A stretch of 64,000 bases of DNA, taken from positions 6,882,001-6,946,000 of the forward strand of contig NW_025963968.1 in assembly GCF_023055435.1 (NCBI RefSeq), written 5' to 3'. The stretch's first letter is position 1. Every line of letters begins with the position of its first letter. The position numbers and the translations under genes are program-made. The notes below the pieces were generated by a model. It was not told the DNA's origin and searched no databases. It was given only the letters and a program-made list of their open reading frames with translations. Below are positions 2,131 to 25,070 of this stretch, one piece after another. This DNA comes from Haliotis rufescens (lineage: Eukaryota).

Positions 2131-3036
2131 CAAATATTGTTTTCTTATTATTTGATAAACAAATGGATGTTTTGACAATTTATCTTATTAAATGAAATGG
2201 GTACAGCGTATTGCATTATGTTGGCACAGTACAAGAGTACATGTTCTCCATCTTATGTGTATACGTAAAATACGTGGCGTCCTATTCGTGCAAAAAATAC
2301 AAATGGATATTAGATGAAACTGTATACTTGGACAGTCATCGTTTTAAAAATGAAATGTTAATCTACAGTTAATAGCTCAACAGCATATATAATATAATGA
2401 TGATTATTTACGTGTCATATGAATAATGTTTATGTTATATCTTTCTCCTTACCAACGATCCCTTTTTAATCGATTAAGAATGTTTTCATAGTTTATGATT
2501 CATACTGCGCAATTAAATTGCAGAATAAAATAACCACGCATCAACCCTTACAAGTCAACTCTCGCGAATGTATTTTGAGCGATATATTATAGTTAAAAGA
2601 ATACAGGATATCTAATAAATATCTCCTAATATATGTTTTCATGTGTTTTTATCATACCACATGTAAGTTCAGGAATATGTTCATCCTTCCTTGCAGATTA
2701 TTCACAAAAGATGTTTTCCACATAACTCAAGTTATTAAGATATCCTTCCTTCAATCATTTCTGTGTTATAATGGCCCTATACCTCGATGTGAAGACATAC
2801 AGATGGACCATTGAAAAGCAATATTAATTCACCCAGTCCACTTGGAACTCATGAGTTCAACCAACGTTGATGTACACCATATTCATAATTTGTAGTTTAT
2901 GTTGTACATATATGAAGTAAACAAATGAGGAAAATAAGGAGCAATGTAACACATATTTTATTGAAGTACTCTTGGTTCTACATTAATGCATAGTGATAAA
3001 GCTAGAGTTGTATCTTCGGCTTGTGTAAGAAGACTC

Positions 3037-3532
3037 TCAGTAGTAACCGTACCCCATACCTGAAAGAGAACACATAATACACATGTCAGTGGGATTAAAT
3101 CAAGATGTGTTCCTTTCATTTAACGTGGGTTCAATTTGGTGTTAATCTATGTTGATGGATTGACGGCTTAACTTAAATGTAACGCCAAACATGATATTAA
3201 TCAGATAACCTACCAATTCCTTTGCCAAGTCCAATTCCTCCTCCAATTCCACCATACAGTCCTCCCATTCCACCGTACAGTCCTCCCATGCCTCCGTACA
3301 GACCTCCCATGCCTCCGTACAGACCTCCCATGCCTCCGTACAGACCTCCCATGCCTCCGTACAGACCTCCCATACCTCCGTACAGGCCTCCCATACCATA
3401 GCCGCCATAGCCAAGGCCACCAAGGCCACCAAGGCCACCAAGGCCTCCGTACATGTCCATTCCGTAGCCAATGGGTTTGGCGTAGGTAGCAACAGCCAGA
3501 CAGGCAACAAGGACGACGATAATCTTCATCAT
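3037..3532 (-). CDS. Secreted Gly/Met/Tyr-rich protein, pair 1 minus gene; spliced CDS 3532-3214 + 3059-3037, 113 aa ending GMGYGYY
   Basis: Signal peptide MMKIIVVLVACLAVATYA, (GGL)4, MGGLY(GGMGGLY)6. Phase-1 donor G|GTAGGT at 3213; acceptor TTTCAG|GTATGGGGTACGGTTACTACTGA; AATAAA at 2962-2957. Exon-2 acceptor at 3541; non-coding exon 1 about 4349-4304. Confidence 0.9.
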
Positions 3533-3690
3533 TTTAAATAGCTGTCATAAAGAAATATTTTGAATTAGCGATAATTTTAAACAACCAGGTTAATTTATTT
3601 GCAAAACGGTAATTCATCCATACAACCGATTACAAAGGTATTATCAATTCAAATTATTATATATGTATTTTGTTTCTACGTTATTATTTT

Positions 3691-3922
3691 GTGTTGTTGT
3701 TTAACGCCGCATTCAGCAATATTCCAGCTGTATGACGGCTGTCTGTAATAATGGAGTCTGGACCCGACAATCCAGTGATTGACATCATGAGCATCGATCC
3801 ACTCAATTGGGAAACGATGGCATGCATCAAACAAGTCATCAAGCCCGACCACCCGATCCTGTTAGTCGCCTCAAGCATACTCGCCTTTTACGGCAAGTGT
3901 ATTCTGCTCCGGATCGTCACGG
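3691..3922 (-). mobile_element. SINE-like element (non-tRNA head, GCTGGAATATTGCTGA-GCGGCGTTAAAC tail) in intron 1
   Basis: Same family at 10528-10760, 56661-56893 and 61375-61605. Absent from intron 1 of the pair 3 and pair 4 minus genes. Confidence 0.8.
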
Positions 3923-4348
3923 CGGATAATGCACATATACATTATTTGAATGACTGAGAGGGTAAACATTCACGTGATTCATATATTTATAATACATGTT
4001 CATTAATCAGTAATGATATATTGGAAGCTACGCTTGAATGTTTCTTCACCTTATCTCCGAATATGGAACATATGGCGAATATCGAAGCCAAATGTTGTAC
4101 GCGTGATGGTTCAGGATGTAATAACTTAAATCCATGTTTCAAAAATATTATGTGAACTTTGGCGAACTTTTTGTTGACGAAAAGAGAGTTGACCGTTGTA
4201 AAAAAGTTTAACGACCTTAACTTAAATCATGGTTGATGTCACCATATGGATAAGCAAGTGGTATTACTACAACATTTACACAGTGTCAAATACAGATACT
4301 CACATTGAGGTACACAGATCGACTATTTGCAAATGCAGGAAAGTTCAG

Positions 4349-4645
4349 TGATGTGGTCACTCACCACACTCACGTATATATACCTGGTGTATTATGTATT
4401 ACCTGTGATTGATTAGCCTGGGAATGGCTACTTCCGGGTGGGATCAATGACAAACGTCAATTAACTCTTCCGGAACAAGTAAAGGCGACATAAAATTACC
4501 AATAAGCATGTATTTTATCCTTGGGGCTTAAATGTGAGTAGAATTGGGTAACTGTACAAGGAAGAGTGGACATTGCGCCAGCGGGGTTAGACATTCCCGC
4601 AATCCCCGGCCTATATAAGAACACAGAAAAAGGCCGTAATCACCA
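4349..4645. promoter_or_regulatory. Bidirectional promoter of pair 1
   Basis: Minus TATATATA 4382-4375 with Inr TCACTG (A at 4349) and donor GTGAGT at 4303. Plus TATATAAG 4612-4619 with Inr CCAGTT (A at 4645) and donor GTTAGT at 4673. The intervening block is conserved in all four pairs. Confidence 0.8.
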
Positions 4646-4906
4646 GTTTCGCACAGCTCCATAGTGACAAAGGTTAGTTGACTTGAATTCACATGATTTG
4701 TTTAAATTAATGAAGTCGAATTTGTAAATGTATTAAAATGTCAATAAACGAAGGCAAATACTGTTAATTACATTTCTACCGCATGAAATTGAAATCTATT
4801 CAAAGATTATTTGTTTTACAATAATCGTATTTCAAATATAATCACTTGATGGTATTAATGTAACGAAATTAAGAAAGTATGTATTTTTTCATGGCAGCTA
4901 CTGAAA

Positions 4907-6529
4907 ATGATGAAGATTATCGTCGTCCTTGTTGCCTGTCTGGCTGTTGCTGCCTACGCAAAACCCACTGGCTACGGTATTGGCATGTACGGAGGCCTTG
5001 GTGGCCTTGGTGGCCTTGGCTATGGTGGCTATGGAATGGGAGGCTTGTACGGAGGCATGGGAGGTCTGTACGGAGGCATGGGAGGCTTTGGCTATGGTGG
5101 TCTGGGAGGTCTGTACGGAGGTATGGGTCTTAACGGAGGCTTGGGAGGCCTGTACGGAGGCTTGGGAGGACTGTACGGAGGAATGGGAGGACTGTACGGC
5201 GGCATGTACGGAGGAATTGGACTTGGCAAAGGAATTGGTACGTTTGCAATGTAATATAATTATGTTAACATGGCATTAGGAGACATGTATGGTTGCATGA
5301 ACATTTAATAGACTTGTGTCATTTTTGCATATTGATTTGCTAATTTCAGTAACATATAATCTGTCTGTAGGTTTGGAGATGGGAGGTGAGGTGTAAGGGA
5401 GTGGGGGTGGATGGTAGGGGGGTTGGGTGGGGGTGGCTTGAGTTTTGTTCGCAATCTTCTACTCTCAATACATACAATGATTACCGTTGTTGCCTGTCTG
5501 ACTGTTGCTACCTACGACAAACCCATTGGCTTCGGTTTGGACGTTCACGGAGGCCTTGATGGCCTTGGCTATGGAGGCTAAGGTAAGGGAGGCCTGTATG
5601 GAGGAATAGGCCTTTATCGAGGCGTGGGAGGCATGCATTGAGGCATGTGTGTGTGTTGATCTGATGATAGGTAAATTGCGAGGAATGATCCCACTGTATG
5701 GTGGAACGGGATATGTGAAGGTAAGGGTCTTTTCTGCATATTGATTTGCTAAATTTGAGTAACATATACAAAGGACATGTATGGCATGCTGGGGTAGTAC
5801 AGTAACCATGTCACTGACTCTGGCCAGATACAAGTAATATCTCACTCTTTCTAATTTCGCCACAGTTCTATTTAAATAGCGAAACGAAGCGATCATGATG
5901 TCAACCAAGCGAAACAAGTATCACAATAACATGCTTACATATGTTCCATTCACATGCCTTTCAGGACTGTTGTCAGATGATCATATTTGAAAATCACTTT
6001 TATGGTTTAAGTGTTTCTTTTATATATCATTCCTCCAACATCATATTGACATGAACATCACATTCGAACTCTGCTTCATTGCTGTTGTGGTTTTTGTGTC
6101 GTAGCAGTTATGAGCATGTTAGTGAACACTTCAGCCATATAGTGACAACCCAATCTTTCAAGGCACTGTTATGACACATTATTGATTAAATCACATCCAT
6201 CGATGTACGTCGGTCCTACGACAAGCACGAGGAACTTATAATTGGGAACTAATTTTGACCGGGAATCCCCATCGAATCGAAGGAAAAACAAGCAAGGACT
6301 ATGAGTTTTGTATTGTTCTTTTTAAACTTGATAAAATACTTCACATTACGGGAGCAATCTACAATACAGGGCTGAACCTTCCTTGCTATCAACGTAGTTA
6401 TTCCAAGGCGAGTACATGATTTGTTTTGATTAATAGTTGCAATTTACACTATTGTTGGTTAGACAATTGCATACGCATCCCTTTATTTATATAGAATGTA
6501 TTTTTACTTCAGGTATGGGATACTATTGA
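4907..6529 (+). CDS. Secreted Gly/Met/Tyr-rich protein, pair 1 plus gene; spliced CDS 4907-5237 + 6513-6529, 115 aa ending GMGYY
   Basis: Signal peptide and GGLY repeats. Acceptor GGCAG|CTAC at 4898; donor G|GTACGT at 5238; acceptor TTACTTCAG|GTATGGGATACTATTGA; AATAAA 6627-6632. Confidence 0.9.
5465..5720 (+). pseudogene. Decayed duplicate of exon 2 inside intron 2
   Basis: Degenerate signal-peptide and Gly-repeat sequence (gttgcctgtctgactgttgctacctacgacaaacccattggc) with frameshifts, ending at donor-like GTAAGG. The following intron segment (tgcatattgatttgctaa) is also duplicated. Confidence 0.8.
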
Positions 6530-6899
6530 GGTTGGTGAGACGGCGCCTCAGATCTGCAACAGTTTCAGCGCTGATCAAACAAACCTCTCAATGCTTCACG
6601 GAAGACAAATACTTTCTTCTCGGATCAATAAAGGACATTTCTACAATACTTAATATTTTGTTGTTAGTTTCCAGTGATCCAATCATATAATTGTGACCCT
6701 TATTTTGCCTTTTACGCCTAATATAATGTGTTTCAGTAGATAATCGAGAATAATTATCATCTGGCGTTGACGTATTATATGTCATTCAAATCACTCACTG
6801 TAAGTTGGAGGCCAAATTGCATATTGTTTGTCTTGATACTGTCCAGCATTAGAGAAATACTTACTTCCTTACCAAGTATCATATCGACACAAATTCTGA

Positions 6900-8970
6900 T
6901 CAACGTTTACCATAAACATTTCACCCTTTGCTGTAACTCCTCACGCCAACTGAAGACCCTGGTTTCCATATATGGAATCAGGCCATGGTCACGCGTTGCT
7001 CTCATCATACTCTCATTTGGTACCGTTTGGAGCATGCTATGGCAATCCGCTTCATAGCTATATTTTAGGCATGACCTGAATTCAGATTTAAAAGACTTTG
7101 TATTGTGAATATACTGCTGTTCCCAAATATACCCGAAACCAAAGCTAAACAGGATATATTTACAATTCGAAATCCAGTTGCTTTTGCCTTTATTAGATGC
7201 CTGTAACATCATATTGTCACACTTTTGTGGATAACGGGTGTCAGGCATAGAAATAAGCGTCAGCCCGTAACTAATACATATTGTGTAAGCATAAATAGAT
7301 ACATGTAATGGATGTCGGCCGCACTCTCCACTAACGATGTGGTTAGGGGTAGATATCTTGACATCAAGAAAGCGCTTACACGCCAACATATGTACAGTTT
7401 TCATTTCATCATTTTGATACAACACCTATACCTCTGATCCATAAAGCAATATTGGGGTTATTTCCATGTCAAATATTCTCGACAACAGTTCATGGCCAAA
7501 TTAATCAGCTTTACATTATGACTTCAAATGCAAAATACAGCTTTTCTCTTTTGCAAAGCTGCATTTTCGAAGCGTCTGGGCCACGGAAGAAATTTCTAGA
7601 AAACATAACGCCTAAGAATTTGTAAAAAGATACACACTTGAGTTTAGTCCCTTTGTAAAACCATTTCCTGACAAACGCCCCCACCCATGCCTTCTTGAAC
7701 ACCAAGAACGTTGTAACCAAATTAACATCTTATCAAAGATCAATGTAATATTTCTCCAAAACATTCTTTGGATTCTGCAATCCCTCAATACTATCTGCTA
7801 TTATGATAATATCATCTGCGAATAGCAAAATGAAACAAATGCGTCAAATCAGGGTACAACTGGATACCTTTCCTCAATTTCGAATAATAATTAATAAAAA
7901 TGGAAAATAAAAAAGGACTTCAAACGAAANNNNNNNNNNNNNNNNNNNNNNNNNNNNNNNNNNNNNNNNNNNNNNNNNNNNNNNNNNNNNNNNNNNNNNN
8001 NNNNNNNNNNNNNNNNNNNNNNNNNNNNNNNNNNNNNNNNNNNNNNNNNNNNNNNNNNNNNNNNNNNNNNNNNNNNNNNNNNNNNNNNNNNNNNNNNNNN
8101 NNNNNNNNNNNNNNNNNNNNNNNNNNNNNNNNNNNNNNNNNNNNNNNNNNNNNNNNNNNNNNNNNNNNNNNNNNNNNNNNNNNNNNNNNNNNNNNNNNNN
8201 NNNNNNNNNNNNNNNNNNNNNNNNNNNNNNNNNNNNNNNNNNNNNNNNNNNNNNNNNNNNNNNNNNNNNNNNNNNNNNNNNNNNNNNNNNNTTTTGGTGT
8301 CGTATCCCTTACAGGTAGACATTTATCAGTCTTTGGATCTAGGCCACGGCTGTCGTCCTAGGCTATAACAGACAACCCCTGGGTACCCCCTCCGTCGCTC
8401 TCACTGGGGCGAAGAGGCGTTTGTCCCTCGGCACCATGGTATCGGCGTTTCGGTGATCCCCGGCGTGTAGTAGTGAATTCTGAATTCATCATTTTCAAGG
8501 ACATACACGTCGCCATTTATCATTAGTTTTTCATAGGAGAGATAAGCTGCCTTATCGCTTTTACATGCATCCACCACGTGAGGGATAAGCCCCGCCCTTA
8601 TCTTTCTAACTCTCTCTTCTATGCCATTAACTATTCCTCTTCTTTATCAACAAGAGTTTCCAATTTGGATATTCTTTCTTCAAATTCAACGTTTTCCGAC
8701 CTCAGCTTAAAAAAATAATCATTGTATCAAACTTTCTTTTAAGTTTACCAATGTTTACCAATGTCAGATCTCAAGTTTTAAACGCTCAGAGTCATCTTCC
8801 TGGTTGCGGTTAGAATCGCTGTTCCTCTTGTTAACGTCGTGCTGAAGTAGACTATGCAGTTGCCTTACTTCGGGCACCCCAACTGACACTTCCCCGACCC
8901 CGCGGGCCTTGGTTTAACTTCACCTCAGAACATACTTGTAGGAGTCATGGTATCACGAGCTCAAATATTG
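6900..8970 (-). mobile_element. Decayed non-LTR retrotransposon, copy 2 (part of the approximately 6.85-kb tandem unit)
   Basis: Near-identical to 60-2130; position 1 aligns with 6847. Confidence 0.7.
7930..8291. other. Assembly gap (N run) at the position equivalent to the first gap
   Basis: Run of N with nearly the same flanks as 1083-1289. Confidence 1.
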
Positions 8971-9867
8971 TTTTCGTATTATTTGATAAACAAATGGATG
9001 TTGTGACAATTTATCTTATTAAAGGAAATGGGTACAGCGTATTGCATTATGTTGGGCACAGTACAACAGTACATGTTCTCCATTTTATGTGTATACGTAA
9101 AATACGTGGTGTCCTATTCGTGCAAAAAATCCAAATGGATATTAGATGAAACTGTATACTTGGACAGTCATCGTTTTAAAAATGAAATGTTAATCTACAG
9201 TTAATAACTCAACAGCATATATAATATCATAATGATTATTTACGTGTCATATGAATAATGTTTATGTTATATCTTTCTCCTTACCAACGATCCCTTTTTA
9301 ATCGATGAAAAAATTTGTCATAGTTTATGATTCATACAGCGCAATTAAATTGCAGAATAAAATAACCACGCATCAACCCTTACAAGTCAACTCTCGCGAA
9401 TGTATTTTGAGCGATATATTATAGTTAAAAGAATACAGGATATCTAATATATATCTCCTGAAATATGTTTTCATGTGTTTTTATCATACCACATGTAAGT
9501 TCAGGAATATGTTCATCCTTCCTGCAGATTATTCACAAAAGATGTTTTCCACACAACTCAAGTTATTAAGATATCCTGCCTTTAATAATTTCTGTGTTAT
9601 AATGGCCCCATACCTCGATGTGAAGACATACAGATGGACCATTGAAAAGCAATATTAATTCACCCAGTTCACTTGGAACTCATGAGTTTAACCAACGTTG
9701 ATGTACACCATATTCATCACTTGTAGTTTATGTTGTACATATATGAAGTAAACAGATGAGGAAAATAAGGAGCAATGTAAGATATATTTTATTGAACTAC
9801 TCTTGGTTCTACATTAATGCATAGTGATAAAGCTAGAGTTGTATCTTCGGCTTGTGTAAGAAGACTC

Positions 9868-10369
9868 TCAGTAGTAACCGTACCCCATACCTGAAAGAGA
9901 ACACATAATACACATGTCAGTGGGATTTAATCAAGATGTGTTCCTTTCATTTAACGTGGGTTCAATTAAGTGACACTGTTAATCTATGTTGATGGATTGA
10001 CGGCTTAACTTAAGTGTAACGCCAAACATGATATTGATAAGATAACCTACCAATTCCTTTGCCAAGTCCAATTCCTCCGCCAATTCCACCATACAGTCCT
10101 CCCATTCCACCGTACAGTCCTCCCATGCCTCCGTACAGACCTCCCATGCCTCCGTACAGACCTCCCATGCCTCCGTACAGACCTCCCATGCCTCCGTACA
10201 GACCTCCCATACCTCCGTACAGGCCTCCCATACCATAGCCGCCATAGCCAAGGCCACCAAGGCCACCAAGGCCACCAAGGCCTCCGTACATGCCCATTCT
10301 GTAGCCAATGGGTTTGGCGTAGGTAGCAACAGCCAGACAGGCAACAAGGACGACGATAATCTTCATCAT
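9868..10369 (-). CDS. Secreted Gly/Met/Tyr-rich protein, pair 2 minus gene; spliced CDS 10369-10051 + 9890-9868, 113 aa
   Basis: Near-identical to the pair 1 minus gene with the same splice signals; exon-1 donor GTGAGT at 11001. Confidence 0.9.
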
Positions 10370-10527
10370 TTTAAATAGCTGTCATAAAGAAATATTTTGA
10401 ATTAGCGATACATTTAAACAACCAGGTTAATGTATTTGCAAGACGGTAATTCATCCATACAACCGATTACAAAGGTATTATCAATTCAAATTATTATATA
10501 TGTATTTTGTTTCTACGTTATTATTTT

Positions 10528-10760: not shown

Positions 10761-11046
10761 CGGATAATGCACATATACACTATTTGAATGACTGAGAGGG
10801 TAAACATTCACGTGATTCATATATTTATAATACATGTTCATTAATCAGTAATGATATATTGGAAGCTACGCTTGAATGTTTCTTCACCTTATCTCCGAAT
10901 ATGGAACATTTGGCGAATATCGAAGCCAAATGGTGTACGCGTGATGGATAAGCAAGTGGTATTACTACAACATTTACACAGTGTCAAATACAGATACTCA
11001 CATTGAGGTACACAGATCGACTATTTGCAAATGCAGGAAAGTTCAG

Positions 11047-11343
11047 TTATGTGGTCACTCACCACACTCACGTATATATACCTGGTGTATTATGTATTAC
11101 CTGTGATTGATTAGCCTGGGAATGGCTACTTCCAAGTGGGATCAATGACAAACGTCAATTAACTCTTCCTGAACAAGTAAAGGTGACATAAAATTACCAA
11201 TAAGCATGTATTTTATCCTTGGGGCTTAAATGTGAGTAGTATTGGGTAACTGTACAAGGAAGAGTGGACATTGCGCCAGCGGGGTTAGACATTCCCGCAA
11301 TCCCAGGCCTATATAAGAACACAGAAAAAGGCCGTAATCACCA
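11047..11343. promoter_or_regulatory. Bidirectional promoter of pair 2
   Basis: Minus TATATATA 11080-11073 and plus TATATAAG 11310-11317; same conserved core; exon-1 donors at 11001 (-) and 11371 (+). Confidence 0.8.
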
Positions 11344-11604
11344 GTTTCGCACAGCTCCATAGTGACAAAGGTTAGTTGACTTGAATTCACATGATTTGTT
11401 TAAATTAATGAAGTCGAATTTGTAAATGTATTAAAATGTCAATAAACGAAGGCAAATACTGTTAATTACATTTCTACCGCATGAAATTGAAATCTATTCA
11501 AAGATTATTTGTTTTATAATAATCGTATTTCAAATAGAATCACTTGATGGTATTTATGTAATGAAATTAAGAAAGTATGTATTCTTTCATGGCAGCTACT
11601 GAAA

Positions 11605-14179: not shown

Positions 14180-14987
14180 TTGGGCACAGTACAACAGTAC
14201 ATGTTCTCCATCTTATGTGTATACGTAAAATACGTGGTGTCCTATTCGTGCAAAAAATCCAAATGGATATTAGATGAAACTGTATACTTGGACAGTCATC
14301 GTTTTAAAAATGAAATGTTAATCTACAGTTAATAGCTCAACAGCATATATAATATAATGATGATTGTTTACGTGTGATATGAATAATGTTTATGTTATGC
14401 CTTTCTCCTTACCACCAATCCCTTCTGAATCGATTAAGAATGTTTTTATAGTTTATGATTCATACTGTGCAATTAAATTACAGAGTAAAATAACCACGCA
14501 TCAACCCTTACAAGTCAACTCTCGCGAATGTATTTTGAGCGATATATTATAGTTAAAAGAATACAGGACATCTAATATATATCTCCTTAAATATGTTTTC
14601 GTGTGTTTTTATCATACCACATGTAAGTTCAGGAATATGTATATCCTTCCATGCAGATTATTAACAAAATATGTTTTCCACACAACTCAAGTTATTTACA
14701 TATCCTGCCTTCAATGATATTTGTGTTATAATGGCCCTATGTGAAGACATACCGATGGAGCTTTGAAAAGTAATATTAATTCACCCAGTCAACTTGGAAC
14801 TCATGAGTTCAACCAACGTTGATGTACGCCATATTCATCACTTGTAGTTTATGTTGTACATATATGAAGTAAACAGATGAGGGAAATAAGAGCAATGTAA
14901 CACATATTTTATTGAACTACTCTTGGTTCTTCATTAATGGATAGCGATAAAGCTAGAGTTGTATCTTCGGCTTGTGTAAGAAGACTC

Positions 14988-15459
14988 TCAGTAGTAACCG
15001 TACCCCATACCTGAAAGAGAACACATAATACACATGTCAGTAGGTTAAAATCAAGATGTGTACCTTTCATTTATCTTACGTTCAAGTAAGTTTTAATCTA
15101 GGTTAATGGTTGCTTAATTTATTGTTATGTCAAGCATGATATTACACAGATAACCTACCAATTCCTTTGCCAAGTCCAATTCCTCCGTACATGCCGCCGT
15201 ACAGTCCTCCCATTCCTCCGTACAGTCCTCCCATTCCTCCATACAGGCCTCCCAAGCCTCCGTAAAGACCCATACCTCCGTACAGACCTCCCAGTCCACC
15301 ATAGCCAAAGCCTCCCATGCCTCCGTACAGGCCTCCCATTCCATAGCCGCCATAGCCAAGGCCACCAAGGCCTCCGTACATGCCCATACCGTAGCCAGTG
15401 GGTTTAGCGTAGGCAGCAACAGCCAGACAGGCAACAAGGACGACGATAATCTTCATCAT
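14988..15459 (-). CDS. Secreted Gly/Met/Tyr-rich protein, pair 3 minus gene; spliced CDS 15459-15159 + 15010-14988, 107 aa
   Basis: Signal peptide and repeats; donor GTAGGT; GMGYGYY terminal exon; exon-1 donor GTGAGT at 15903. Confidence 0.9.
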
Positions 15460-15957
15460 TTTCAGTAGCTGCCATGAAGGAATAAACACGTTCATAATCG
15501 CAGTAGATTAATATGTAAAACAAATAATATACATACAATTCTATGATTCAACAATACACATGATTCAAAGATCTGTGTACATTAATAAAAAAATATTGCA
15601 ATTATGTATTCATTCGAAGTTACGCTTGAATGTTTCTTCACATCATAGCCGAATATGATACGAATATTGAAGCAAAGTTTTATACACTTGATCGAACAGG
15701 ATGGAATCACTTGATACCATGTTTCAAAAATTCCTGTGTGTACTTCGGAGCAATGAAAAAGTAAAGAATGGATTTCATAAATTGGTTGTCACGAGGATAA
15801 TCGACTTAAACTAACTTTAAACATTGTTAGCATTATCACATAGAGAATCAAATAGAATTACTACCACATGTACACTTATAGAATGCGATATGTATATACT
15901 CACATTTAGTTACACAGATCACACAGATCGACTATTTGCGAATGCAGTAAAGTTCAG

Positions 15958-16251
15958 TGAGGTGGTCACTCATAGTTCTCAGGTTTATATACTTGGTGTG
16001 TTTTGTGTTACCTGTGATTGATTTGCCTGGGAATGGCTACTTCCAGGTGGGTTGAATAAACATCAATCAACTCTTCCTGAACAAGTAAAGATGACATAAA
16101 ATTATCAATTAACATGTGTTTTATCCTAGGGGCTAACATGTCAGTAGTATTGGGTAAGTGTACAAGGAAGTGTGGACATTGCTCCAGTGGGGTTAGACAT
16201 TCCCACAATCCCCGGCCTATAAAAGCAAACAGAAAAAGGCCTTTATCACAA
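15958..16251. promoter_or_regulatory. Bidirectional promoter of pair 3
   Basis: Minus TATATAAA 15991-15984 with Inr TCACTG; plus TATAAAAG 16218-16225; plus exon-1 donor GTAAGT at 16279. Confidence 0.85.
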
Positions 16252-16567
16252 GTTTCGCACAGCTCCATAGTGACAAAGGTAAGTTGGCTTGTATTTTCAT
16301 TATTTGTTAAAATTAATGAAGTCGTATTTGTAAATGTATTAAAATGTCAAGAAACAAAGGAACCGAAAGTGATTACGACTAATTTCTGCTGACAACCTCA
16401 CATTTTGTGATACATTGCAAATACTGTTTATTACATTTCCGTCTCATGAAATTGAAATCTATCTAAACATTACTTGTTTTACAATAATCTTATTTCAAAC
16501 CGATTCGCTGGAAGGTATTTATGTAATGGGATTAAGAAGTTAAGTATTCTTCTGGCAGCTACTGAAA

Positions 16568-17991
16568 ATGATGAGGATTATCGTCGTCCTTGTTGCCTGT
16601 CTGGCTGTTACCACCTACGCCAATCCCACTGGCTACGGTATTGGCATGTACGGAGGCCTTGGTGGCCTTGGCTATGGCGGCTATGGTATTGGAGGCCTGT
16701 ACGGAGGCATGGGAGGTCTGTACAGAGGTATGGGTCTTTACGGAGGCTTGGGAGGCCTGTACGGAGGAATGGGAGGCCTGTACGGCGGCATGTATGGAGG
16801 AAAATACGGCGGCATGTACGGGGGAATTGGATTTGGAAAAGGAATTGGTAAGTTTCGTGAGTACACTGTATGTTGTACACCAGAACCATTGGCTATGTCA
16901 TGGGCATTTACGTGTGCCTTGTTGACCTTGGCTATGGCAGCTATTGTATGGAATGTCTGTGTGTGGTCACTGGATGTATATACGGAGAAATGAGCCTTTA
17001 AAGATGATTGGTAGGCTTGTACGGAGGCATTGTACGACTATATGTTGGCATGTAAGGCATGGATGGACTGTCTGGTTAAATTGGATATAGGCACGGTAAG
17101 GTAATTGTGCATTTTAATTTGAGTAACATGAACATATTTATGGATATAGATCCAGATACCAGTGACACGCGAAAGTTATATTTAGTTAGTCACGACGAAA
17201 GGATCGTGTTGCAACCAGGTGAAACAAGTATCACAGTCACATGTTTACATTCACATCCAGTTCTGGAATGTAGTCATATCTTGGTGTATGTAATTCTTTA
17301 TATATCTTTCCCCCATCTTCATATTGTTATTGGGGCGGTCGGGTAGCCTAGTGGTTAAAGCATTCGCTCGTCACGCCGAAGACCCGGGTTCGATTCCCGA
17401 CATGGGTACAATGTGTAAAGCCCATTTTCTGGTGTCCCCCGCCGTGATATGGCTGGAATATTGCTAAAAGCGGCGTAAAACCATACTCACTCACTCACTC
17501 ATATTGTTATAGGAATCACATTCAGACTAGGCTCCATGTCTGCCGTTGCTGTCGTGGCAGTTATGAATGAGTTAGTGAATGTTAGTGAAAATTACAACCA
17601 TTTGACGACAATCCTGTAGTTCAAGGCATCAGCAGCATTATTAATGTAGGAAGTTCGGCTGTTATCAAACATTATTGGCTAGATCACAATAGCCCTTACG
17701 ACAAACCACGGGGTACTTGCAACTTGGAAATAGTTTTTCCTGGGATAATTCGGATCGAATCGAAAAGTACCGCGCCATTTGTATTGTTACTTTTAATCTT
17801 TGATAAAAACCGGGCACATTACGGGATTATTCTACTATATAGGTCTGAACCGTTCTTGATATCACCGTAATTATTCCAAGTCGAGTAAACAATTTCTCTT
17901 GAATAGTAGTTGCAATTTACGACATATTGAATAAACACTCTTTTATTTATATCAAATGTGTCTTTTTACTTCAGGCCTTGGATACTATTGA
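16568..17991 (+). CDS. Secreted Gly/Met/Tyr-rich protein, pair 3 plus gene; spliced CDS 16568-16847 + 17975-17991, 98 aa ending GLGYY
   Basis: Donor G|GTAAGT at 16848; acceptor TTACTTCAG|GCCTTGGATACTATTGA; AATAAA 18088-18093. Confidence 0.88.
16880..17095 (+). pseudogene. Heavily decayed duplicate of exon 2 in intron 2
   Basis: ccattggctatgtcatgggcatttac...ccttggctatggc...cttgtacggaggcat, ending at GTAAGG. Confidence 0.7.
17332..17500 (+). mobile_element. tRNA-derived SINE with (CACT)n tail
   Basis: A/B boxes (TAGCCTAGTGG, GGTTCGATTCCC); target-site duplication ATATTGTTAT. Confidence 0.9.
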
Positions 17992-18889
17992 GGTTAGTGA
18001 GATGGCGTCTCTCATCTGCAACAGTGTCAGCGCAGATCAAACAACACCTCCACGCATCATGGCCAACAAATACTCACCTCTTGGATAAATAAATCACACT
18101 TCTAACATGCTAATTATCTATTTTGTCATTAGTTTTCAGTTTTCCATTTATATAATTTACACCGCTCTTATGCCTTCTACCACCTAAAGAATCTGGTTTG
18201 GCAAATAATCGAGGCTGTTTATCCTCTGGCGTTGGCGTCGACCCCTATTACTACTCACTGTTAGTTGCAGTCTAAATTGCATGTTCTTATCAACGTGTAC
18301 CATAAACATTTTACCTTTGCAAGTAAACGTCGCACCGACTAAAGACATAGTTTTGAATAGACATGCATCAGTGAATCCAAATAAGGTCAAGGTCAAGGGT
18401 ACATGAAAAGTGTAAAGATCACAGCAGGGAAATGGGTAATAAAAATGTTTATTAGAAACGATTTCGAAACAGACGAAAACATTGACATAAGCGGAGTGTT
18501 GAGCTATGAGTCGTGTAGATAGCACATTTTAGTACATTTTCTTCAACAGGTTGGTAGAAATCACGGGTAAACACAAACACAATAAGGTCTTTGAGTAAAT
18601 AAAAGCGACAAAACCCTTTGCAAAAATATATAAATAAAAGACATATCGCCAAAAGCAGAGTCGATTGTACGATTCGGATTATATCATGATCATGTAATTT
18701 ATTATGAATCACTATCAAATAGTGATCATACCAGGTGTCACTATTTTAAGTTATGTTAATTTCCAATTTATGGCATGTATTCTGTGAAGTTTACAACTGC
18801 TTGACGGGGCACCCTAGTTACGATGAAAACCCAGTACGTTGTATATGCTGCCACAAACCCCTTTCCATAATATTGACTATATCATGAGC

Positions 18890-20562: not shown

Positions 20563-20730
20563 GTGAGTGAGTGAGTGAGTATGGTTTTACGCCGCTTTTA
20601 GCAATATTCCAGCAATATCACGGCGGGGGACACCAGAAATGGGCTTCACACATTACTCATGTTGGGAATAGAACCCGGGTCTTCGGCGTGACGAGCGAAT
20701 GCTTTAACCACTAGGCTACCCGACCGCCCC
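20563..20730 (-). mobile_element. tRNA-derived SINE (same family as 17332)
   Basis: Reverse complement of the 17332 element; target-site duplication GGTTCCAATA. Confidence 0.9.
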
Positions 20731-23118
20731 TTTGGTTCCAATAAATAGATTCAAATACCATCACCATAAATGAGAAAGATTTGTTAAGAACTACCACAGT
20801 AAGTCAGTCACCGTGACATCGCGTTGTGATCCATTTACATCAAATACAGGACGTCACACTGGCCTACAAAAGAAACGCGAAAGGTATATTTTTTCATGAA
20901 CCTGGGGCGATTACAAGTATTAGTCATTACTGATCAATTGACCGATCATTAAAAGGTGATTAAGATTAGGGGGTCTTTATAATCAGAGACAACTCTTCTG
21001 TATGTGTTTGTGCTTCACAGGAATGCGCAAGTAAGCCGTTTTCTAATACGAAAGTCATAAATCGTGTCAATGAGACACTACATAAGTGTTATAGCAATTA
21101 ACACATATCTTTGAAAGAGATAGTTATTCATAATTACTCATATATTCTTTTGGAAAATAGAATGGAGGTTACATAATGCGATATGAATATGTAATTGTTT
21201 TGTGTTTGATTGTTGCATACACAATAATTCACCTAAGTTGGTGGTATACAAGGGAGCCGATAGAGGCTCATGTTCACTTCCAACTATAGACTGTATGATG
21301 AGGCGGGGACAGTTTTTAGAGGGCAGTCACATTGTAGTGTCTGAATCTTAGTTTTAACTTTCTGTTTCATTATCTGCTCTGTTATTGCGTGTTGACAACT
21401 GTGATAAGTGTAAGTGTACCTGTGCGATCTTTGAATCACTCAGAAGCTGACATTTAGCTCAGGTCAGTTAACAGGTGTACATCCTTTTGGTTTGTGTACA
21501 CGGTGTGTTGGTGTATGAAGAATTGAACCATTAGTGTCTGCGTGGGGGTAACGACAAGGACAATGTTAACGCAATAATGTAAAACTAGATCGAAAAGTAG
21601 AAGTATCATGGAAATGATTTCAAACATCAAAATACATCCTTTTGAGATTTACCATCCTCCATGGGAGCTGATTACAGGAATTCGTTCACTCATTACGACA
21701 ACAACTCCATTTCAGATAAAAAAGCGCATGGCCGTTAAAAGAGGGTGATTCCCAAGGACATGCAGGTTGTTGAGAGAAACTATATTGAAACTTATTAAGC
21801 TAATTCATGAAAGCAATTATAAGCAAAACTTATATAGCGAGGGTCTTCATGGAATCACATCAAGCAACACATGAAACAATGGTCAATACACCTTGAAACT
21901 ATTGAAATCAGTCAGTATCAGTCATACAGCCCCCTAAAACGAAATATTCTAATACAATAACAACATATTTGGAAAAGAAAGCAAAGGCGCGTATCCAAGA
22001 CTAACACATATATAGTCAGGATATCATCGATACGATTCTAAACTTTGCATCTAAAATGAAAGTTCAATCAGGGTATGCTTAAAAAATATGGTTGGAACTG
22101 AAGAATCCTATCACTAAGTCAACATACATTTCCAAATTATTGAGAAATTGCTTATGTTATACCACTGCATCTATTTGAAAAAGGGATCTATCCCATCTAG
22201 GAATCTATAGACTCATATGTTTGGTTTCACGTGTTGGGAAAATGAGAACATTATGGATTTCAGTTCGGATTCACAATAAAAGGGTCACAATAAAATTAAA
22301 CTGATACAACTGTACCAAATATCTCCAAATCAATCAACTGACAAACAAACCATTTGAAGTATTTTGTAGAATATCAAATGGATTTGACAGTCTTTGGCTA
22401 GTTGATCTCATTAATAAATAAGAATTCTATGCTTAACACGGTAAACTCGCTTATCACACTTCATTTGCTTATCACACTTCTGAAACCCCCTGTGACGTCA
22501 TCTATTGTTTTCGATGGTTGAGGTTTTCGGTCACAGAGTCATTACATATAGAAGCAAACGTTTTTGAAGTCATGCTTTCAAAATACCCGAAATTATAATG
22601 TGGAATATGTAATAAAATATTATTTTTTTTTGTTCTTGTCAATTTATTATAAGCTGTATGGCAAATTGTGTAACTCTGAAGGATGTCTGAACATATCGCT
22701 TTAATTCGTTTCAACAAAATCAGTAAATGAGAGTCACAGCTTCAAGATGTGATGGGATAAATGTCTGACATATATCACATAGCCGACATCCACATTTACT
22801 TTTGGTGATCTTTCCGTTCACATTTCACTAATAATTCTTGTCATGAAGTGCATTGTAAATCGACGGATTAAGAAAAACGTTCTGAAATTGTGTAAAGCAT
22901 TCCACTCATACACTCCACTGTCGGTGTCAAGATCAGACTAACATTAACCCACATCCTCTGGATCCTGTGTAACTTATATTAATATTATAAAAAATGTCGT
23001 ACATCTGTTTAAATTATATAATGAAATTAACAAGAATACGTTTAACAGGTATTTTATTACAATCGTAGATTATACATCAGTGTATAATACAGGGAGCTGT
23101 TCATTGAAGGCACGACTC

Positions 23119-23760
23119 TCAGTAGTAACCGTATCCCATACCTAAAAGAGACAACAAAATACGCAATTATAAGATAGCAACACACTTGAGTACACTAAAG
23201 TACTTCTGCCTAAGGAGTTTCTCCCAAAACACAAATTGTCTGATAAAAGTCTGACAGAAGCCGTTATTTAGAGATAAAAAGTGTTTGGTTTCGCTTTTCA
23301 AACAAGGACATTGCATGTATTGAGAGAAGAAAATATTCTGTCGCTAATCGTACCCCTCCCATCGCAACCCCTTCACAAATGTTACATGTTACTAGAATCA
23401 GCAAAATCAATATGCCACAATCATAATATACACAGACAACTTACCAATTCCTTTGCCGAGTCCAATTCCTCCGTACATGCCACCGTACAGTCCTCCCATT
23501 CCTCCGTACAGGCCTCCCAAGCCTCCGTAAAGACCCATACCTCCGTGCAGACCTCCCATGCCTCCGTACAGACCTCCCATGCCTCCGTACAGGCCTCCCA
23601 TGCCACCATACAGGCCTCCCATACCGAAGCCGCCATAGCCAAGGCCACCAAGGCCACCAAGGCCACCAAGGCCTCCGTACATGCCCATACCGTTGCCAAT
23701 GGGTTTGGCGTAGGCAGAAACAGCCAGACAGGCAACAAGGACGACGATAATCTTCATCAT
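23119..23760 (-). CDS. Secreted Gly/Met/Tyr-rich protein, pair 4 minus gene; spliced CDS 23760-23445 + 23141-23119, 112 aa
   Basis: Donor GTAAGT; acceptor CTTTTAG|GTATGGGATACGGTTACTACTGA; AATAAA 23058-23053; exon-1 donor GTGAGT at 24156. Confidence 0.9.
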
Positions 23761-24202
23761 TTTCAGTAGCTGTCAATAAAATACGAAATAGGTTTTGCGA
23801 TAGCAATAGACTTGCTGCATGTTGTTATTGAATTTGAAAAATAATGTTAAACGTGGATGTACACCTTAAACATATATGACCAAAGTGATGTTCCGTGTAG
23901 TTGATAATTTAGAATGTAAGAAATAAAACAAAAATGTTTTATCATTTACTGTGAACCCTTAGTTGGTGTAAAGATTAAGGTTAAACATAAAGAGTTATTC
24001 GATTAAACGATTTTAGAAATAGATATGGTGTATCGACGAATCAGTTATTGATTGGGTAAAACGGTTGGTCCTCACAGGTGAAATATTTACGAGGGATGCG
24101 GAGACCAAGTAGCCTATAATGGCAGACTAATAAGTGTTATTCACGTTGGTACTCACAGTTAGGTGTACGGAGCGACTAGGTTGTCAATGCAGAGACGTTC
24201 AG

Positions 24203-24475
24203 TGAAGTTTACGCTCTTAACATTCACGTTTATATACGCGGCGTGTTATGTGTAACCTGTGATTGATTTGCCTGGGAATGGCTACTTCCGGGTGAGATCA
24301 AGGGCACACACCAATTAACACACCCTGAACATGAACAGGTGACATAACATCACCGATGAGCATGTGTTTTATCCATATGCTTAGGGCTTAAATGTGAGAA
24401 GTATTGGATAACTGTACAAGGAAGTGTGGAAAGTGCACCAGTGAGGACGTCCCCACAACCCCGGCCATAATAAAC
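24203..24475. promoter_or_regulatory. Promoter of pair 4 (minus core intact, plus core disrupted)
   Basis: Minus TATATAAA 24236-24229 with Inr TCACTG and conserved core. The plus side reads ccggccATAATAAAC instead of ccggccTATA(T/A)AAG. Confidence 0.75.
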
Positions 24476-24859
24476 ACATTATATAAGTCTAACGACATAT
24501 TAATGATCAACCTGAAAGTCGCCAAGACGATGGGACTTGAATTTGTACCATTTTGTTAAAAGAAAACAAATGTAAACGTAGTTCTAACTGTAGCAGTACA
24601 CCATGGGCAGGTTCAGAGATGAATTACCACTTTTAACAATTTGTTCACATTTTGAAACTACCAACTACGCCTTTGAGCCAGATAATAGAAATACAAAACA
24701 TTAATAACACGGTCTATTTAAGGAGGAATCTTACCGACTTTAAAACCTGCATATTACCGTCAAATGAAAACAAAATTTATTTTGTTTGTTCATGAACGGC
24801 TCTACAAAATGATTACTAGATATTGGCAGTCTTTTGCTATCAAATATATAAAAAAATCG

Positions 24860-25070
24860 TTCCGGAGGAATGGGACTTATGTTCGGAGGCATGGGAGGTA
24901 TGTACGTCGGCATAGGAGGTCTATATAGAGGCATAGAATTATGTACATATGCATATGGGTATGTACAGATGCATGGGAAATATATACAAAACATGGGAGG
25001 TATGTGCATAGGGATGTGGGGACCATACACAGGCATGGGGGGTCCATATAGAAGCATGGGAGGCATGATC
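24860..25070 (+). pseudogene. Decayed plus-strand partner of pair 4
   Basis: Reads GGMGLMFGGMGGMYVGIGGLYRG...GMGGPYRSMGGM. No signal peptide or exon 1; the 3' side runs directly into a satellite. Confidence 0.75.

What the first reader, a model, noticed from the sequence alone, without database searches (positions are those of the whole stretch)
2957..25070. Chorion-locus-like array: four head-to-head pairs of secreted GGMGGLY-repeat proteins on shared ~295-bp bidirectional promoters
Seen: seven intact three-exon genes (non-coding exon 1, signal-plus-repeat exon 2, micro-exon 3) and one pseudogene, always arranged minus gene, promoter, plus gene. Predicted start sites are 293-296 bp apart in pairs 1-3. 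The pair, not the single gene, is the unit of duplication. Minus genes always end GMGYGYY and plus genes GMGYY or GLGYY. Established: silkmoth chorion genes also occur as divergent pairs on short bidirectional promoters and encode GYGGL-rich secreted proteins. GGY/GGLY repeats also occur in molluscan structural proteins such as shematrins and suckerins. Inference: a convergently evolved, dosage-amplified two-component locus for a molluscan extracellular material (periostracum, shell matrix, radula or egg coat), with the two subtypes co-expressed. I do not recognise a description of this architecture in molluscs but cannot search for one.
Basis: partly seen in the sequence, partly recalled or inferred. 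Interest (0 to 1): 0.9.

Follow-up and report, generated by a model that had tools for sequence, protein, structure and literature searches.

The report
Paired abalone glycine-tyrosine repeat protein genes
This abalone locus holds back-to-back pairs of small secreted glycine/tyrosine-repeat protein genes around a conserved ~300-bp control region; they belong to a family of about 125 genes that otherwise lies in head-to-tail arrays, and their function and expression remain untested.

Summary
The sequence observation holds. The window has seven intact three-exon genes and one decayed copy, arranged as four minus/plus pairs. A fifth pair lies just upstream of the window. Predicted start sites are 293-296 bp apart, and the pair is the duplication unit.

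The N gap at 7930-8291 is intergenic. It lies about 1.3 kb and 1.5 kb from the nearest polyA signals and touches no exon.

The genome is a Haliotis (abalone).
- **Family size.** The family has about 125 copies in this genome. About 115 of them lie in one-orientation head-to-tail arrays on three other contigs, so head-to-head pairing is a local peculiarity.
- **Promoter origin.** The minus half of the promoter is homologous to the promoter of the arrays on C24 and C79 (none was detected for the C1 array). The plus half exists only at this locus.
- **Constraint.** The stretch from minus exon 1 to just before the plus TATA stays 68-92% identical between the most diverged pairs, while introns are unalignable. 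This holds even where the plus gene is dead.
- **Partner proteins.** Partners are near-identical mosaic paralogues that exchange sequence. They are not two protein classes as in silkmoth chorion.

Homologues appear only in Haliotis RefSeq annotations, under automatic names. I found no paper describing the family.

Function is therefore inferred: probably a bulk structural matrix protein cross-linked through tyrosine.

Verdict: a real feature, a new variant of a known kind, of moderate interest.

The parts
2940..3059 (-). Pair 1 minus gene, exon 3: micro-CDS 3037-3059 (G|GMGYGYY stop) plus 3' UTR; polyA signal (reverse complement) at 2957-2962. The 3' end is approximate.
3214..3541 (-). Pair 1 minus gene, exon 2: ATG at 3532, 18-20 aa signal peptide, (GGMGGLY)n repeats, phase-1 donor.
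4304..4349 (-). Pair 1 minus gene, predicted non-coding exon 1. The GTGAGT donor begins at 4303 on the minus strand; the start site is predicted from TATA plus 33 nt.
   Evidence: partial homology to exon 1/promoter of the C24/C79 arrays
4350..4644 (.). Pair 1 inter-start-site region. Minus TATA (reverse complement) 4374-4383; invariant 34-bp block 4402-4435; locus-specific plus half 4440-4611; plus TATA 4612-4619.
4645..4672 (+). Pair 1 plus gene, predicted non-coding exon 1 (donor AAAG|GTTAGT).
4898..5237 (+). Pair 1 plus gene, exon 2 (ATG 4907).
5487..5650 (+). Degenerate extra copy of exon 2 (with stops) inside intron 2 of the pair 1 plus gene.
6513..6655 (+). Pair 1 plus gene, exon 3: CDS 6513-6529 (GMGYY stop), AATAAA at 6627-6632. 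The 3' end is approximate.
7930..8291 (.). Assembly gap. It is intergenic, inside a decayed LINE remnant, and homologous in position to the gap at 1083-1289.
9771..9890 (-). Pair 2 minus gene, exon 3 (CDS 9868-9890; polyA signal reverse complement 9788-9793).
10051..10378 (-). Pair 2 minus gene, exon 2 (ATG 10369).
11002..11370 (.). Pair 2: minus exon 1 (11002-~11047), shared promoter (block 11100-11133; TATAs 11072-11081 and 11310-11317), plus exon 1 (~11343-11370).
11596..11938 (+). Pair 2 plus gene, exon 2 (ATG 11605).
12153..12395 (+). Degenerate extra exon-2 copy in intron 2 of the pair 2 plus gene.
13277..13419 (+). Pair 2 plus gene, exon 3 (GMGYY stop; AATAAA 13391-13396).
14891..15010 (-). 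Pair 3 minus gene, exon 3 (CDS 14988-15010).
15159..15468 (-). Pair 3 minus gene, exon 2 (ATG 15459). The repeat body and about 45/20 bp of flanking intron are plus-type, which suggests a gene-conversion tract.
15904..16278 (.). Pair 3: minus exon 1 (15904-~15958), shared promoter (block 16011-16044; TATAs 15983-15992 and 16218-16225), plus exon 1 (~16251-16278).
16559..16847 (+). Pair 3 plus gene, exon 2 (ATG 16568, MMRII...).
17975..18116 (+). Pair 3 plus gene, exon 3 (GLGYY stop; AATAAA 18088-18093).
23036..23141 (-). Pair 4 minus gene, exon 3 (CDS 23119-23141).
23445..23769 (-). Pair 4 minus gene, exon 2 (ATG 23760).
24157..24462 (.). Pair 4: minus exon 1 (24157-~24203), minus TATA 24228-24237, block 24256-24289, and the conserved upstream segment. 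Conservation stops at the mutated plus TATA (24463-24475).
24860..25070 (+). Pair 4 plus copy: decayed repeat remnant with no ATG/signal, no exon 1 donor and a mutated TATA. It is a pseudogene.

Best explanation
**What it is (shown from sequence).** The region is a sub-locus of a Haliotis-restricted multigene family. The family encodes small precursors of about 98-116 aa. Each has an 18-20 aa signal peptide and a mature chain of about 80-98 aa. The mature chain is about 53% Gly, 13-18% Tyr, 11-14% Leu and 8-11% Met, built from GGMGGLY-type heptads. It ends in Tyr-Tyr, encoded on its own micro-exon.

**Local arrangement (shown).** Here the genes sit as divergent pairs that were duplicated as units: five pairs on the contig, four in the window. 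Each pair has two TATA/initiator core promoters about 296 bp apart. The stretch from minus exon 1 to just before the plus TATA is held under constraint. Its minus half is the ancestral promoter of the family. Its plus half is found only at this locus.

**How it works (inferred).** The conserved segment serves both core promoters, so partners are co-expressed. Inverted partners exchange sequence by gene conversion. The products are bulk-secreted, intrinsically disordered matrix proteins of the shematrin / silk-like class. They are probably made by shell-forming mantle epithelium and insolubilised through their many tyrosines by tyrosinase or peroxidase cross-linking. Tandem amplification supplies dosage.
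For: **Gene models.**
- Seven intact exon-2 ORFs, conserved phase-1 donors and micro-exons.
- The exon 2-3 junction is matched by the H. rubra RefSeq protein ending ...GLGKGIGMGYGYY.
- The same three-exon plan with a ...YY stop micro-exon occurs in all subfamilies on other contigs.

**Constraint on the promoter, pair 1 versus pair 4.**
- Exon 2 is 92% identical. Sub-windows from 4304 to 4611 are 68-92% identical with almost no gaps. Introns are 46-57%, that is, unalignable.
- Identity falls to about 44-50% exactly at the plus TATA, where the plus gene is dead.

**Origin of the two halves.**
- The minus half (TATA plus the GGAAGT...AATCAATCAC block) aligns with the promoter of the C24/C79 arrays at the same distance from exon 1.
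- The whole element has only five copies genome-wide, all at this locus.

**Unit duplication.** Similarity is congruent in minus-only and plus-only segments.

**Gene conversion.** The pair-3 minus exon 2 and its short flanks are plus-type. The first ~42 nt of the signal-peptide coding sequence are nearly identical across the window's copies (one base differs, in the pair-3 plus gene), synonymous sites included.

**Dosage.** The signal-peptide DNA pattern gives 123 exact hits against 0 in the control.

**Disorder.** AlphaFold2 gives pLDDT below 50 beyond the signal helix. There is no Pfam match.

**Analogy for function.** Has-tsfgr1 of H. asinina is a 114-aa secreted Gly/Leu/Tyr heptad-repeat protein ending in Tyr. 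It is expressed in the larval shell field and the juvenile outer mantle fold edge (PMC2034539). Insoluble Met-rich scaffold proteins are known in the Pinctada shell (PMC7591529).
Against: - No transcript evidence of any kind was obtained. Start sites, exon 1, co-expression and tissue are all unverified.
- The two promoter halves are not significantly similar to each other. The mirrored motifs are no more than suggestive. Conservation of the plus half in pair 4 shows constraint, not bidirectional use.
- The family has not been reported in abalone shell proteomes. However, the mature chains carry only one or two Lys/Arg, so trypsin-based surveys would largely miss them.
- RefSeq's automatic names point in several directions: shematrin-like, spidroin-like, ctenidin-like, neuropeptide-like 31.
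- Homology to Has-tsfgr1 could not be tested, and a search for a GYKGY micro-exon found nothing above chance.
- Pairs 0-2 are 96-99% identical in most segments (the plus-gene 3' half of pair 2 is 89-94%), and the window's two 6.85-kb units carry gaps at homologous sites. Their exact copy number therefore rests on the assembly.
Confidence: 0.55

Rival explanations
1. Two adjacent independent promoters. The pair is simply the footprint of an old inverted duplication of exon 2 that landed upstream of a family member. Each gene has its own unidirectional promoter. Nothing is shared, and partners need not be co-expressed.
For: - The halves have different origins: the minus half matches the array promoter, and the plus half is unique to the locus.
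- The halves are not significantly alike.
- Another head-to-head pair of the family, on C57, lies 8.6 kb apart with inverted homology limited to exon 2 and downstream sequence, so inverted duplication does happen in this family without promoter sharing.
- Exon 1, introns and 3' UTRs of minus and plus genes are unrelated.
Against: In pair 4 the plus gene is dead. Its TATA and exon 1 have decayed to about 45-50% identity. Yet the 170 bp of plus-half sequence up to that TATA remain 72-86% identical to pair 1. This implies that the minus gene uses that segment. With only about 229 bp between the TATA boxes, independence of regulatory input is physically unlikely.
Confidence: 0.25
2. Secreted glycine-rich defence or mucus peptides rather than a structural material. 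These would be analogues of spider ctenidins or acanthoscurrins, C. elegans NLP-29/31, or the Gly/Leu-rich peptides of snail mucus, amplified for epithelial immunity.
For: - RefSeq names family members 'ctenidin-1-like' and 'neuropeptide-like protein 31'.
- The products are small and secreted, mildly cationic (1-2 Lys, few or no acidic residues), and their genes are tandemly clustered, as glycine-rich antimicrobial peptide genes are in nematodes (own knowledge).
- Gly-rich antibacterial peptides are reported from garden-snail mucus (PMC8945727, listed).
Against: - The names are automatic composition matches. The HMMER profile search finds only Haliotis proteins as true hits.
- There are no dibasic processing sites and no Arg-rich charge.
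- More than 100 near-identical copies in 4-kb arrays, 13-18% Tyr and a conserved terminal Tyr-Tyr fit a bulk cross-linked material better.
- The closest experimentally studied abalone look-alike is expressed in shell-forming cells.
Confidence: 0.15
3. Assembly inflation. Pairs 0-2, and perhaps parts of the giant arrays, are duplicated haplotypes or mis-scaffolded repeats. The true locus would have fewer pairs.
For: - Units 0, 1 and 2 are 96-99% identical over most of their length.
- The window's two units carry N gaps at homologous positions, showing that the assembler struggled here.
Against: - The three copies differ by specific indels: a 260-bp deletion in pair 0 and 140-216 bp gaps in intron 1.
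- Divergence is segment-specific: the plus 3' half of pair 2 is only 87-93% identical to pair 1.
- Pairs 3 and 4 are far too diverged to be alleles, so at least three pairs are certain.
- RefSeq of H. asinina lists at least 13 consecutive family genes.
Confidence: 0.1

Closest known systems
Silkmoth (Bombyx/Antheraea) chorion gene pairs
   Same: Both have divergently transcribed gene pairs around a short (about 300 bp) 5' flank, duplicate as pairs in a cluster, encode small secreted Gly/Tyr/Leu-rich structural-type proteins, and show signs of gene conversion between copies.
   Different: - Chorion partners belong to two distinct protein families (A and B). Here the partners are 83-90% identical paralogues with mosaic repeat bodies.
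- No sequence homology was found: no Pfam chorion match at E <= 1.
- Chorion genes have two exons with the intron in the signal peptide. These have three exons, with a non-coding exon 1 and a terminal micro-exon.
- Most of this family is head-to-tail.
- Co-expression is unproven here.
[quoted passage not shown]
   Same: Both are from abalone. Has-tsfgr1 has a 114-aa precursor, a 17-aa signal peptide, about 11 Gly/Leu/Tyr heptad repeats, over 52% Gly and a terminal Tyr. It is expressed in the shell field and the outer mantle fold edge. It is the best functional analogue with experimental data.
   Different: Its repeat is GGYGLGL and its C-terminus is GYKGY, not GGMGGLY and GYY. No Met-richness is described. 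A genome search for a GYKGY micro-exon gave only chance-level hits.
Shematrins / KRMPs of pearl oysters (Pinctada)
   Same: Both are signal peptide plus Gly-rich XGnX repeats with Tyr/Leu, end in Tyr, are lineage-restricted low-complexity families and are highly expressed shell framework proteins (PMC5400390). RefSeq names an H. cracherodii member 'shematrin-like protein 2'.
   Different: The basic C-terminal motif (RKKKY-type; own knowledge) is absent here. Shematrins are reported as restricted to pearl oysters. No homology beyond composition was found. These proteins are much shorter.
Suckerins (squid ring teeth proteins)
   Same: The GGLY/GGLYGG motif is shared. In the paper library the string GGLYGG turns up mainly in squid-ring-teeth and suckerin-inspired materials papers, plus a few unrelated ones.
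   Different: Suckerins alternate Gly-rich modules with Ala/Thr/His-rich beta-sheet modules (own knowledge). Here Ala, Thr and His are about 0-1% of the mature chain. The taxon and gene structure also differ.
Glycine-rich antimicrobial peptides (ctenidins, acanthoscurrins, C. elegans NLP-29/31)
   Same: Both are small secreted Gly/Tyr-rich products from clustered genes. RefSeq's automatic names point to them.
   Different: There are no dibasic processing sites, and charge is low (1-2 Lys). Copy number and array identity are far higher. No homology was detected.

Membership tests
Silkmoth chorion-type paired locus | Divergent gene pairs sharing a short (about 250-350 bp) 5' flanking region | tested here: met
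   Predicted start sites are 293-296 bp apart and TATA boxes 226-229 bp apart in pairs 1-3. Start sites are predicted, not measured.
Silkmoth chorion-type paired locus | Partners belong to two different protein classes (A/B) | tested here: not met
   Partners are 83-90% identical in exon 2. Repeat-body types are mosaic across orientation. The only fixed difference is GY in the micro-exon.
Silkmoth chorion-type paired locus | Sequence homology to chorion proteins | tested here: not met
   No Pfam family at E <= 1. HMMER profile hits are Haliotis only.
Silkmoth chorion-type paired locus | Coordinate expression of partners | not testable with these tools
Bidirectional promoter (generic) | Opposite-strand start sites less than 1 kb apart with a constrained intervening sequence | tested here: inconclusive
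   Geometry and constraint are met. Actual initiation on both strands is not shown.
Shematrin | Signal peptide plus XGnX Gly-rich repeats ending in Tyr | tested here: met
Shematrin | Basic C-terminal motif (RKKKY/RRKKY-type) and homology to Pinctada shematrins | tested here: not met
   C-termini are GMGYGYY, GMGYY or GLGYY without basic residues. No non-Haliotis true hit was found. The literature restricts shematrins to pearl oysters.
Suckerin | Alternation of Ala/Thr/His-rich modules with GGLY modules | tested here: not met
   Composition of the mature chains: Ala/Thr/His about 0-1%.
Glycine-rich AMP / NLP-29/31 type | Strongly cationic chain or dibasic sites releasing short YGGYG peptides | tested here: not met
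   There are 1-2 Lys per mature chain, almost no Arg and no dibasic site.
Has-tsfgr1-like abalone shell-field proteins | Homology to Has-tsfgr1 (GGYGLGL repeats, GYKGY end) and mantle-edge expression | tested here: inconclusive
   The size, signal, heptad and terminal-Tyr plan is shared. The repeat and C-terminus differ. A GYKGY micro-exon search gave chance-level hits.
Haliotis GGxGGLY small secreted protein family (RefSeq XP_046565582, XP_067657837-49, XP_071095146) | MMK(I/V)...CLAV signal, Gly/Tyr/Leu/Met heptads, GLGK(GI)G phase-1 junction, YY-stop micro-exon | tested here: met

The most novel reading that the evidence does not exclude
The ~296-bp element is a true bidirectional promoter co-driving two near-identical matrix-protein genes. 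That would be the first chorion-like divergent-pair system described in a mollusc. In this reading the whole family (~125 copies, ~0.5 Mb) encodes a major tyrosine-cross-linked component of abalone periostracum or shell framework. Standard proteomics has missed it because the mature chains are almost free of trypsin sites.
Probability: 0.25. Interest if true: 0.7.

Novelty: new variant of a known kind. Interest (0 to 1): 0.5.

Why it matters
**For abalone biology.** If expression confirms the models, abalone would have a very large, lineage-specific family of silk-like secreted proteins. No paper in the searched library describes it, and trypsin-based shell proteomics is poorly suited to detect it. 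That bears on the open question of what the insoluble framework and periostracum of gastropod shells are made of.

**For promoter evolution.** The locus offers a compact natural experiment. The same ancestral promoter module drives one-way head-to-tail arrays elsewhere. Here it sits back-to-back with a second, locus-specific core promoter. One pair has lost its plus gene and another has lost its minus exon 1.

**Limits.** The general phenomena are all well known: bidirectional promoters, tandemly amplified low-complexity matrix genes and gene conversion between copies. The interest is therefore moderate unless expression data reveal something unexpected.

Tried and rejected
- **Cross-species locus.** The look-up of encoding contigs for the H. 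rubra homologue was closed. Synteny across species was therefore not examined.
- **Word-based protein search.** It was swamped by low-complexity candidates and returned three Haliotis proteins. Restricting it to the signal peptide returned one.
- **Pfam.** No match.
- **HMMER profile against 1.84 billion representatives.** Only Haliotis entries are true hits. The others are unrelated repeat proteins.
- **Literature.**
  - The motif strings GMGGLY, GLGKGI and YGGMGG have no relevant paper.
  - GGLYGG occurs mainly in squid ring teeth papers.
  - An earlier search was spoiled by the term 'VACLAV' matching a first name.
  - RefSeq product names combined with Haliotis gave no abalone expression study.
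  - Abalone shell proteome papers do not report the family.
  - The 2026 H. iris genome paper does not mention it.
- **Promoter halves as inverted copies of each other.** Local alignment gave z = 0.9 (pair 1) and 2.8 (pair 3) against shuffles, which is not significant. Mirrored short motifs exist and are conserved between pairs 1 and 3, but are not compelling statistically.
- **H. rubra model as support for minus exon 1.** Its N-terminal extension instead matches a repeat at 28-38 kb of the window, not exon 1.
- **Has-tsfgr1 link via a GYKGY micro-exon.** Three hits against 10 in the control, with no Gly-rich ORF nearby.
- **Weak genome hits.** Those on C113, C168, C223, C390 and C556 are unrelated satellites or showed no Gly/Tyr-rich frame.
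- **Spliced models.** Joined (spliced) protein models were not sent to any search or fold tool. Searches used exon 2 by reference. Exons were concatenated only inside a local script, to read C-termini and composition.

Full report
**Observation.**
The region was read directly and scanned in six frames.

- Seven intact exon-2 ORFs encode MMKIIVVLVACLAV-type signal peptides followed by GGMGGLY-like heptads.
  - Four are on the minus strand: 3214-3541, 10051-10378, 15159-15468, 23445-23769.
  - Three are on the plus strand: 4898-5237, 11596-11938, 16559-16847.
- Each ends at a phase-1 donor (G|GTA) and is followed by a micro-exon with an AG acceptor.
  - Minus genes read G|GMGYGYY-stop.
  - Plus genes read GMGYY-stop or GLGYY-stop.
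- The eighth copy (pair 4 plus, 24860-25070) is debris. Its TATA box and exon-1 donor are gone.
- On both sides of pairs 1-3, and on the minus side of pair 4, there is a TATA box, an initiator-like CA 33 nt downstream and a GT donor closing a 28-46 nt non-coding exon 1.
- These starts are predictions from sequence. No RNA data could be obtained.

**The gap.**
- N 7930-8291 lies 1298 bp beyond the polyA signal of plus gene 1 and 1497 bp before that of minus gene 2. It sits in a decayed LINE remnant.
- It occupies the position homologous to the other gap (1083-1289) in the preceding 6.85-kb unit. Window 1-1082 matches 6847-7928, and 1290-1859 matches 8292-8869.
- No exon, frame or promoter depends on it. 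Continuity across it cannot be judged, and I did not read the homologous letters in other copies.

**Organism and relatives.**
- The closest database proteins are Haliotis RefSeq models.
  - H. rubra XP_046565582, 'ctenidin-1-like'. It ends ...GLGKGIGMGYGYY and so matches the predicted exon 2-3 junction of the minus type.
  - H. asinina XP_067657837-49, 'glycine-rich protein-like' or 'neuropeptide-like protein 31'.
  - H. cracherodii XP_071095146, 'shematrin-like protein 2', which is a fusion of three tandem genes.
- These names are automatic.
- A HMMER profile of 13 family members against 1.84 billion representatives gave only Haliotis proteins as true hits.
- Pfam gave nothing.
- AlphaFold2 predicts only the signal helix, with pLDDT below 50 for the rest.

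**The family in this genome.**
- Searching the window's own genome changed the picture.
- The window is C190:6882001-6946000 of a 1.33-Gb assembly.
- A 21-nt degenerate pattern for the signal peptide hits 123 places, against 0 in the control. Of these, 117 are on one strand.
- They form head-to-tail arrays:
  - about 3.9-kb period on C1 (22 copies);
  - about 4.0 kb on C24 (about 50 copies in three blocks);
  - about 4.46 kb on C79 (about 45 copies).
- Array copies are often identical to one another.
- All subfamilies share the plan of non-coding exon 1, signal-plus-repeat exon 2 ending GLGK(GI)G in phase 1, and a micro-exon ending YY-stop.
- Only two places are head-to-head.
  - This locus, which has a fifth pair just upstream of the window at C190:6878655-6880364.
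  - One pair on C57, 8.6 kb apart, with no shared promoter.
- 'Dosage-amplified' is therefore true of the family. The paired layout is a local variant.

**The promoter.**
Three results bear on it.

1. *Selective conservation.* Between the most diverged pairs (1 and 4):
   - exon 2 is 92% identical;
   - sub-windows from minus exon 1 to just before the plus TATA (4304-4611) are 68-92% identical, almost without gaps;
   - introns are 46-57%, that is, unalignable;
   - identity drops to about 44-50% exactly at the plus TATA of pair 4, whose plus gene is dead.

   A 34-bp block is nearly invariant in all pairs (one variable position): CCTGTGATTGATT.GCCTGGGAATGGCTACTTCC at 4402, 11100, 16011 and 24256.

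2. *Origin.*
   - The minus half (4330-4439: start site, TATA and the GGAAGT...AATCAATCAC part of the block) aligns with the promoter of the C24/C79 arrays, in the same position relative to their TATA and exon 1. This is independent support for the 'hidden' minus exon 1.
   - The plus half (4440-4680) has no relative outside this locus. The whole element has just five copies genome-wide.

3. *Relation of the halves.* The halves are not significantly similar to each other. Several short motifs are mirrored and conserved between pairs 1 and 3:
   - GGGAATGGCTA / TAGACATTCCC;
   - ACTCTTCC / GGAAGAGT;
   - TGATTGAT / ATCAAT.

   They resemble TEAD-, ETS- and PBX-type sites. That resemblance is from my own knowledge and is an inference only.

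Persistence of the plus half in pair 4, after loss of the plus gene, argues that the minus gene uses it. That is the best available indirect evidence for a shared regulatory segment.

**Evolution of the pairs.**
- Minus-only segments (3' UTR, intron 2, intron 1) and plus-only segments (intron 1, intron 2, 3' UTR) give the same order of relatedness: ((0,1,2),3),4. The pair was therefore copied as a unit.
- Pairs 0-2 are a 6.85-kb tandem triplication, 96-99% identical. The exception is the plus 3' half of pair 2, at 89-94%.
- Minus and plus genes share only exon 2 with about 25-45 bp of flank, plus the tiny coding part of exon 3. Exon 1, the introns and the 3' UTRs are unrelated.
- Repeat bodies do not follow orientation.
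  - The pair-3 minus gene has the plus-type body (AAYAKPTGYG..., GGFGYGGLGG...), with plus-type intron flanks.
  - The pair-4 minus gene is intermediate.
- The first ~42 nt of the signal-peptide coding sequence are nearly identical across the window's copies (one base differs, in the pair-3 plus gene), synonymous sites included.
- This indicates gene conversion between inverted partners. It removes the 'two-component' reading: the only fixed protein difference is two residues, GY.

**Function.**
Nothing here measures it. The inference rests on four points.
- *Properties of the mature chains*: 80-98 aa; about 53% Gly, 13-18% Tyr, 11-14% Leu, 8-11% Met; one or two Lys; no Cys; predicted disordered; terminal Tyr-Tyr conserved family-wide on a dedicated exon.
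- *Copy number*: more than 100 near-identical gene copies.
- *An abalone analogue with data*: Has-tsfgr1 is a 114-aa secreted Gly/Leu/Tyr heptad-repeat protein ending in Tyr. It is expressed in the trochophore shell field, the veliger mantle edge and the juvenile outer mantle fold (PMC2034539).
- *Known classes in pearl oysters*: Gly/Tyr-rich and Met-rich insoluble shell scaffold proteins (PMC5400390, PMC7591529).

I therefore favour a bulk-secreted structural matrix protein cross-linked through tyrosine, most likely from shell-forming mantle. The rival is a glycine-rich defence or mucus peptide. With so few Lys/Arg, tryptic shell proteomics would yield little beyond the C-terminal peptide. 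This may explain why the abalone shell proteomes I checked do not report the family.

**What could not be done.**
- Spliced protein models were not submitted to any search or fold tool. All searches used exon 2 by reference. Exons were joined only in a local script, to read C-termini and composition.

**Verdict.**

- The locus resembles the chorion locus in three respects: divergent pairs, a short constrained shared flank, and conversion between copies.
- It is not a member of that system, and it is not a two-class pairing.
- It is a local variant within a large, uncharacterised, Haliotis-restricted family of silk-like secreted proteins that is otherwise arrayed head-to-tail.
- I rate it a new variant of a known kind, of moderate interest.
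- Interest would rise if expression data show true bidirectional co-expression and a role in a material.

Noticed in passing
just upstream of the window: C190:6878655-6880364 (window -3343 to -1590; locus L036 6658-6954 minus, 8068-8409 plus): A fifth head-to-head pair. Both exon-2 ORFs are intact, but a deletion of about 260 bp removes the predicted minus exon 1 and its start site while leaving the TATA box. The minus gene may therefore be crippled.
   Followed up: partly
G000 contigs C1 81.31-81.39 Mb, C24 0.57-0.61 / 0.84-0.94 / 1.04-1.10 Mb, C79 23.34-23.54 Mb (loci L031-L033, L039-L043): Giant one-orientation tandem arrays (periods about 3.9, 4.0 and 4.46 kb) of about 115 near-identical family genes. 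The C24/C79 units carry a promoter module homologous to the minus half of the window's promoter; none was detected in the C1 unit.
   Followed up: partly
window 5487-5650, 12153-12395, 16886-17057 (+): Degenerate extra copies of exon 2 (with stops and frameshifts) inside the long intron 2 of the plus genes. The plus intron 2 is about 1.1-1.3 kb, against about 150 bp in the minus genes. This suggests an old partial tandem duplication that predates the pair duplications.
   Followed up: partly
window 15136-15513 (-): Exon 2 of the pair-3 minus gene, with about 45 bp and 20 bp of flanking intron, is of the plus type (86.5% to the pair-1 plus gene). This is a likely gene-conversion tract between inverted partners.
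   Followed up: partly
window 25071-26088: A 64-bp satellite of about 16 copies directly abuts the decayed plus copy of pair 4.
   Followed up: no
window 28022-29213, 31526-32715, 36289-37491 (pieces 28956-28997, 32423-32509, 37235-37276 on the minus strand): Three copies of a repeat. A short translated piece of it resembles the odd N-terminal extension (MDADKCQKACLGAI...) of H. rubra XP_046565582, so that RefSeq model probably begins in a repeat rather than in a true first exon.
   Followed up: partly
window 17332-17506 and 20558-20730 (inverted); 3688-3872 with copies at 56665-56849 and 61430-61590: tRNA-like SINE copies. One lies in intron 2 of the pair-3 plus gene and another in intron 1 of the pair-1 and pair-2 minus genes.
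   Followed up: no
G000:C57:1971892-1972284 (-) and 1980835-1981234 (+) (loci L034, L035): A second head-to-head pair, from a diverged subfamily ending GYGYY. The genes are 8.6 kb apart with a 71-bp satellite between them. Inverted homology covers exon 2 and downstream sequence only, so no promoter is shared.
   Followed up: partly
window 6907-7425 (-), 41410-41844, 51027-53639, 46101-46529, 60255-61085: Decayed non-LTR reverse-transcriptase and Tc1/mariner-type transposase remnants. The first flanks the assembly gap in the intergenic part of the 6.85-kb unit.
   Followed up: no
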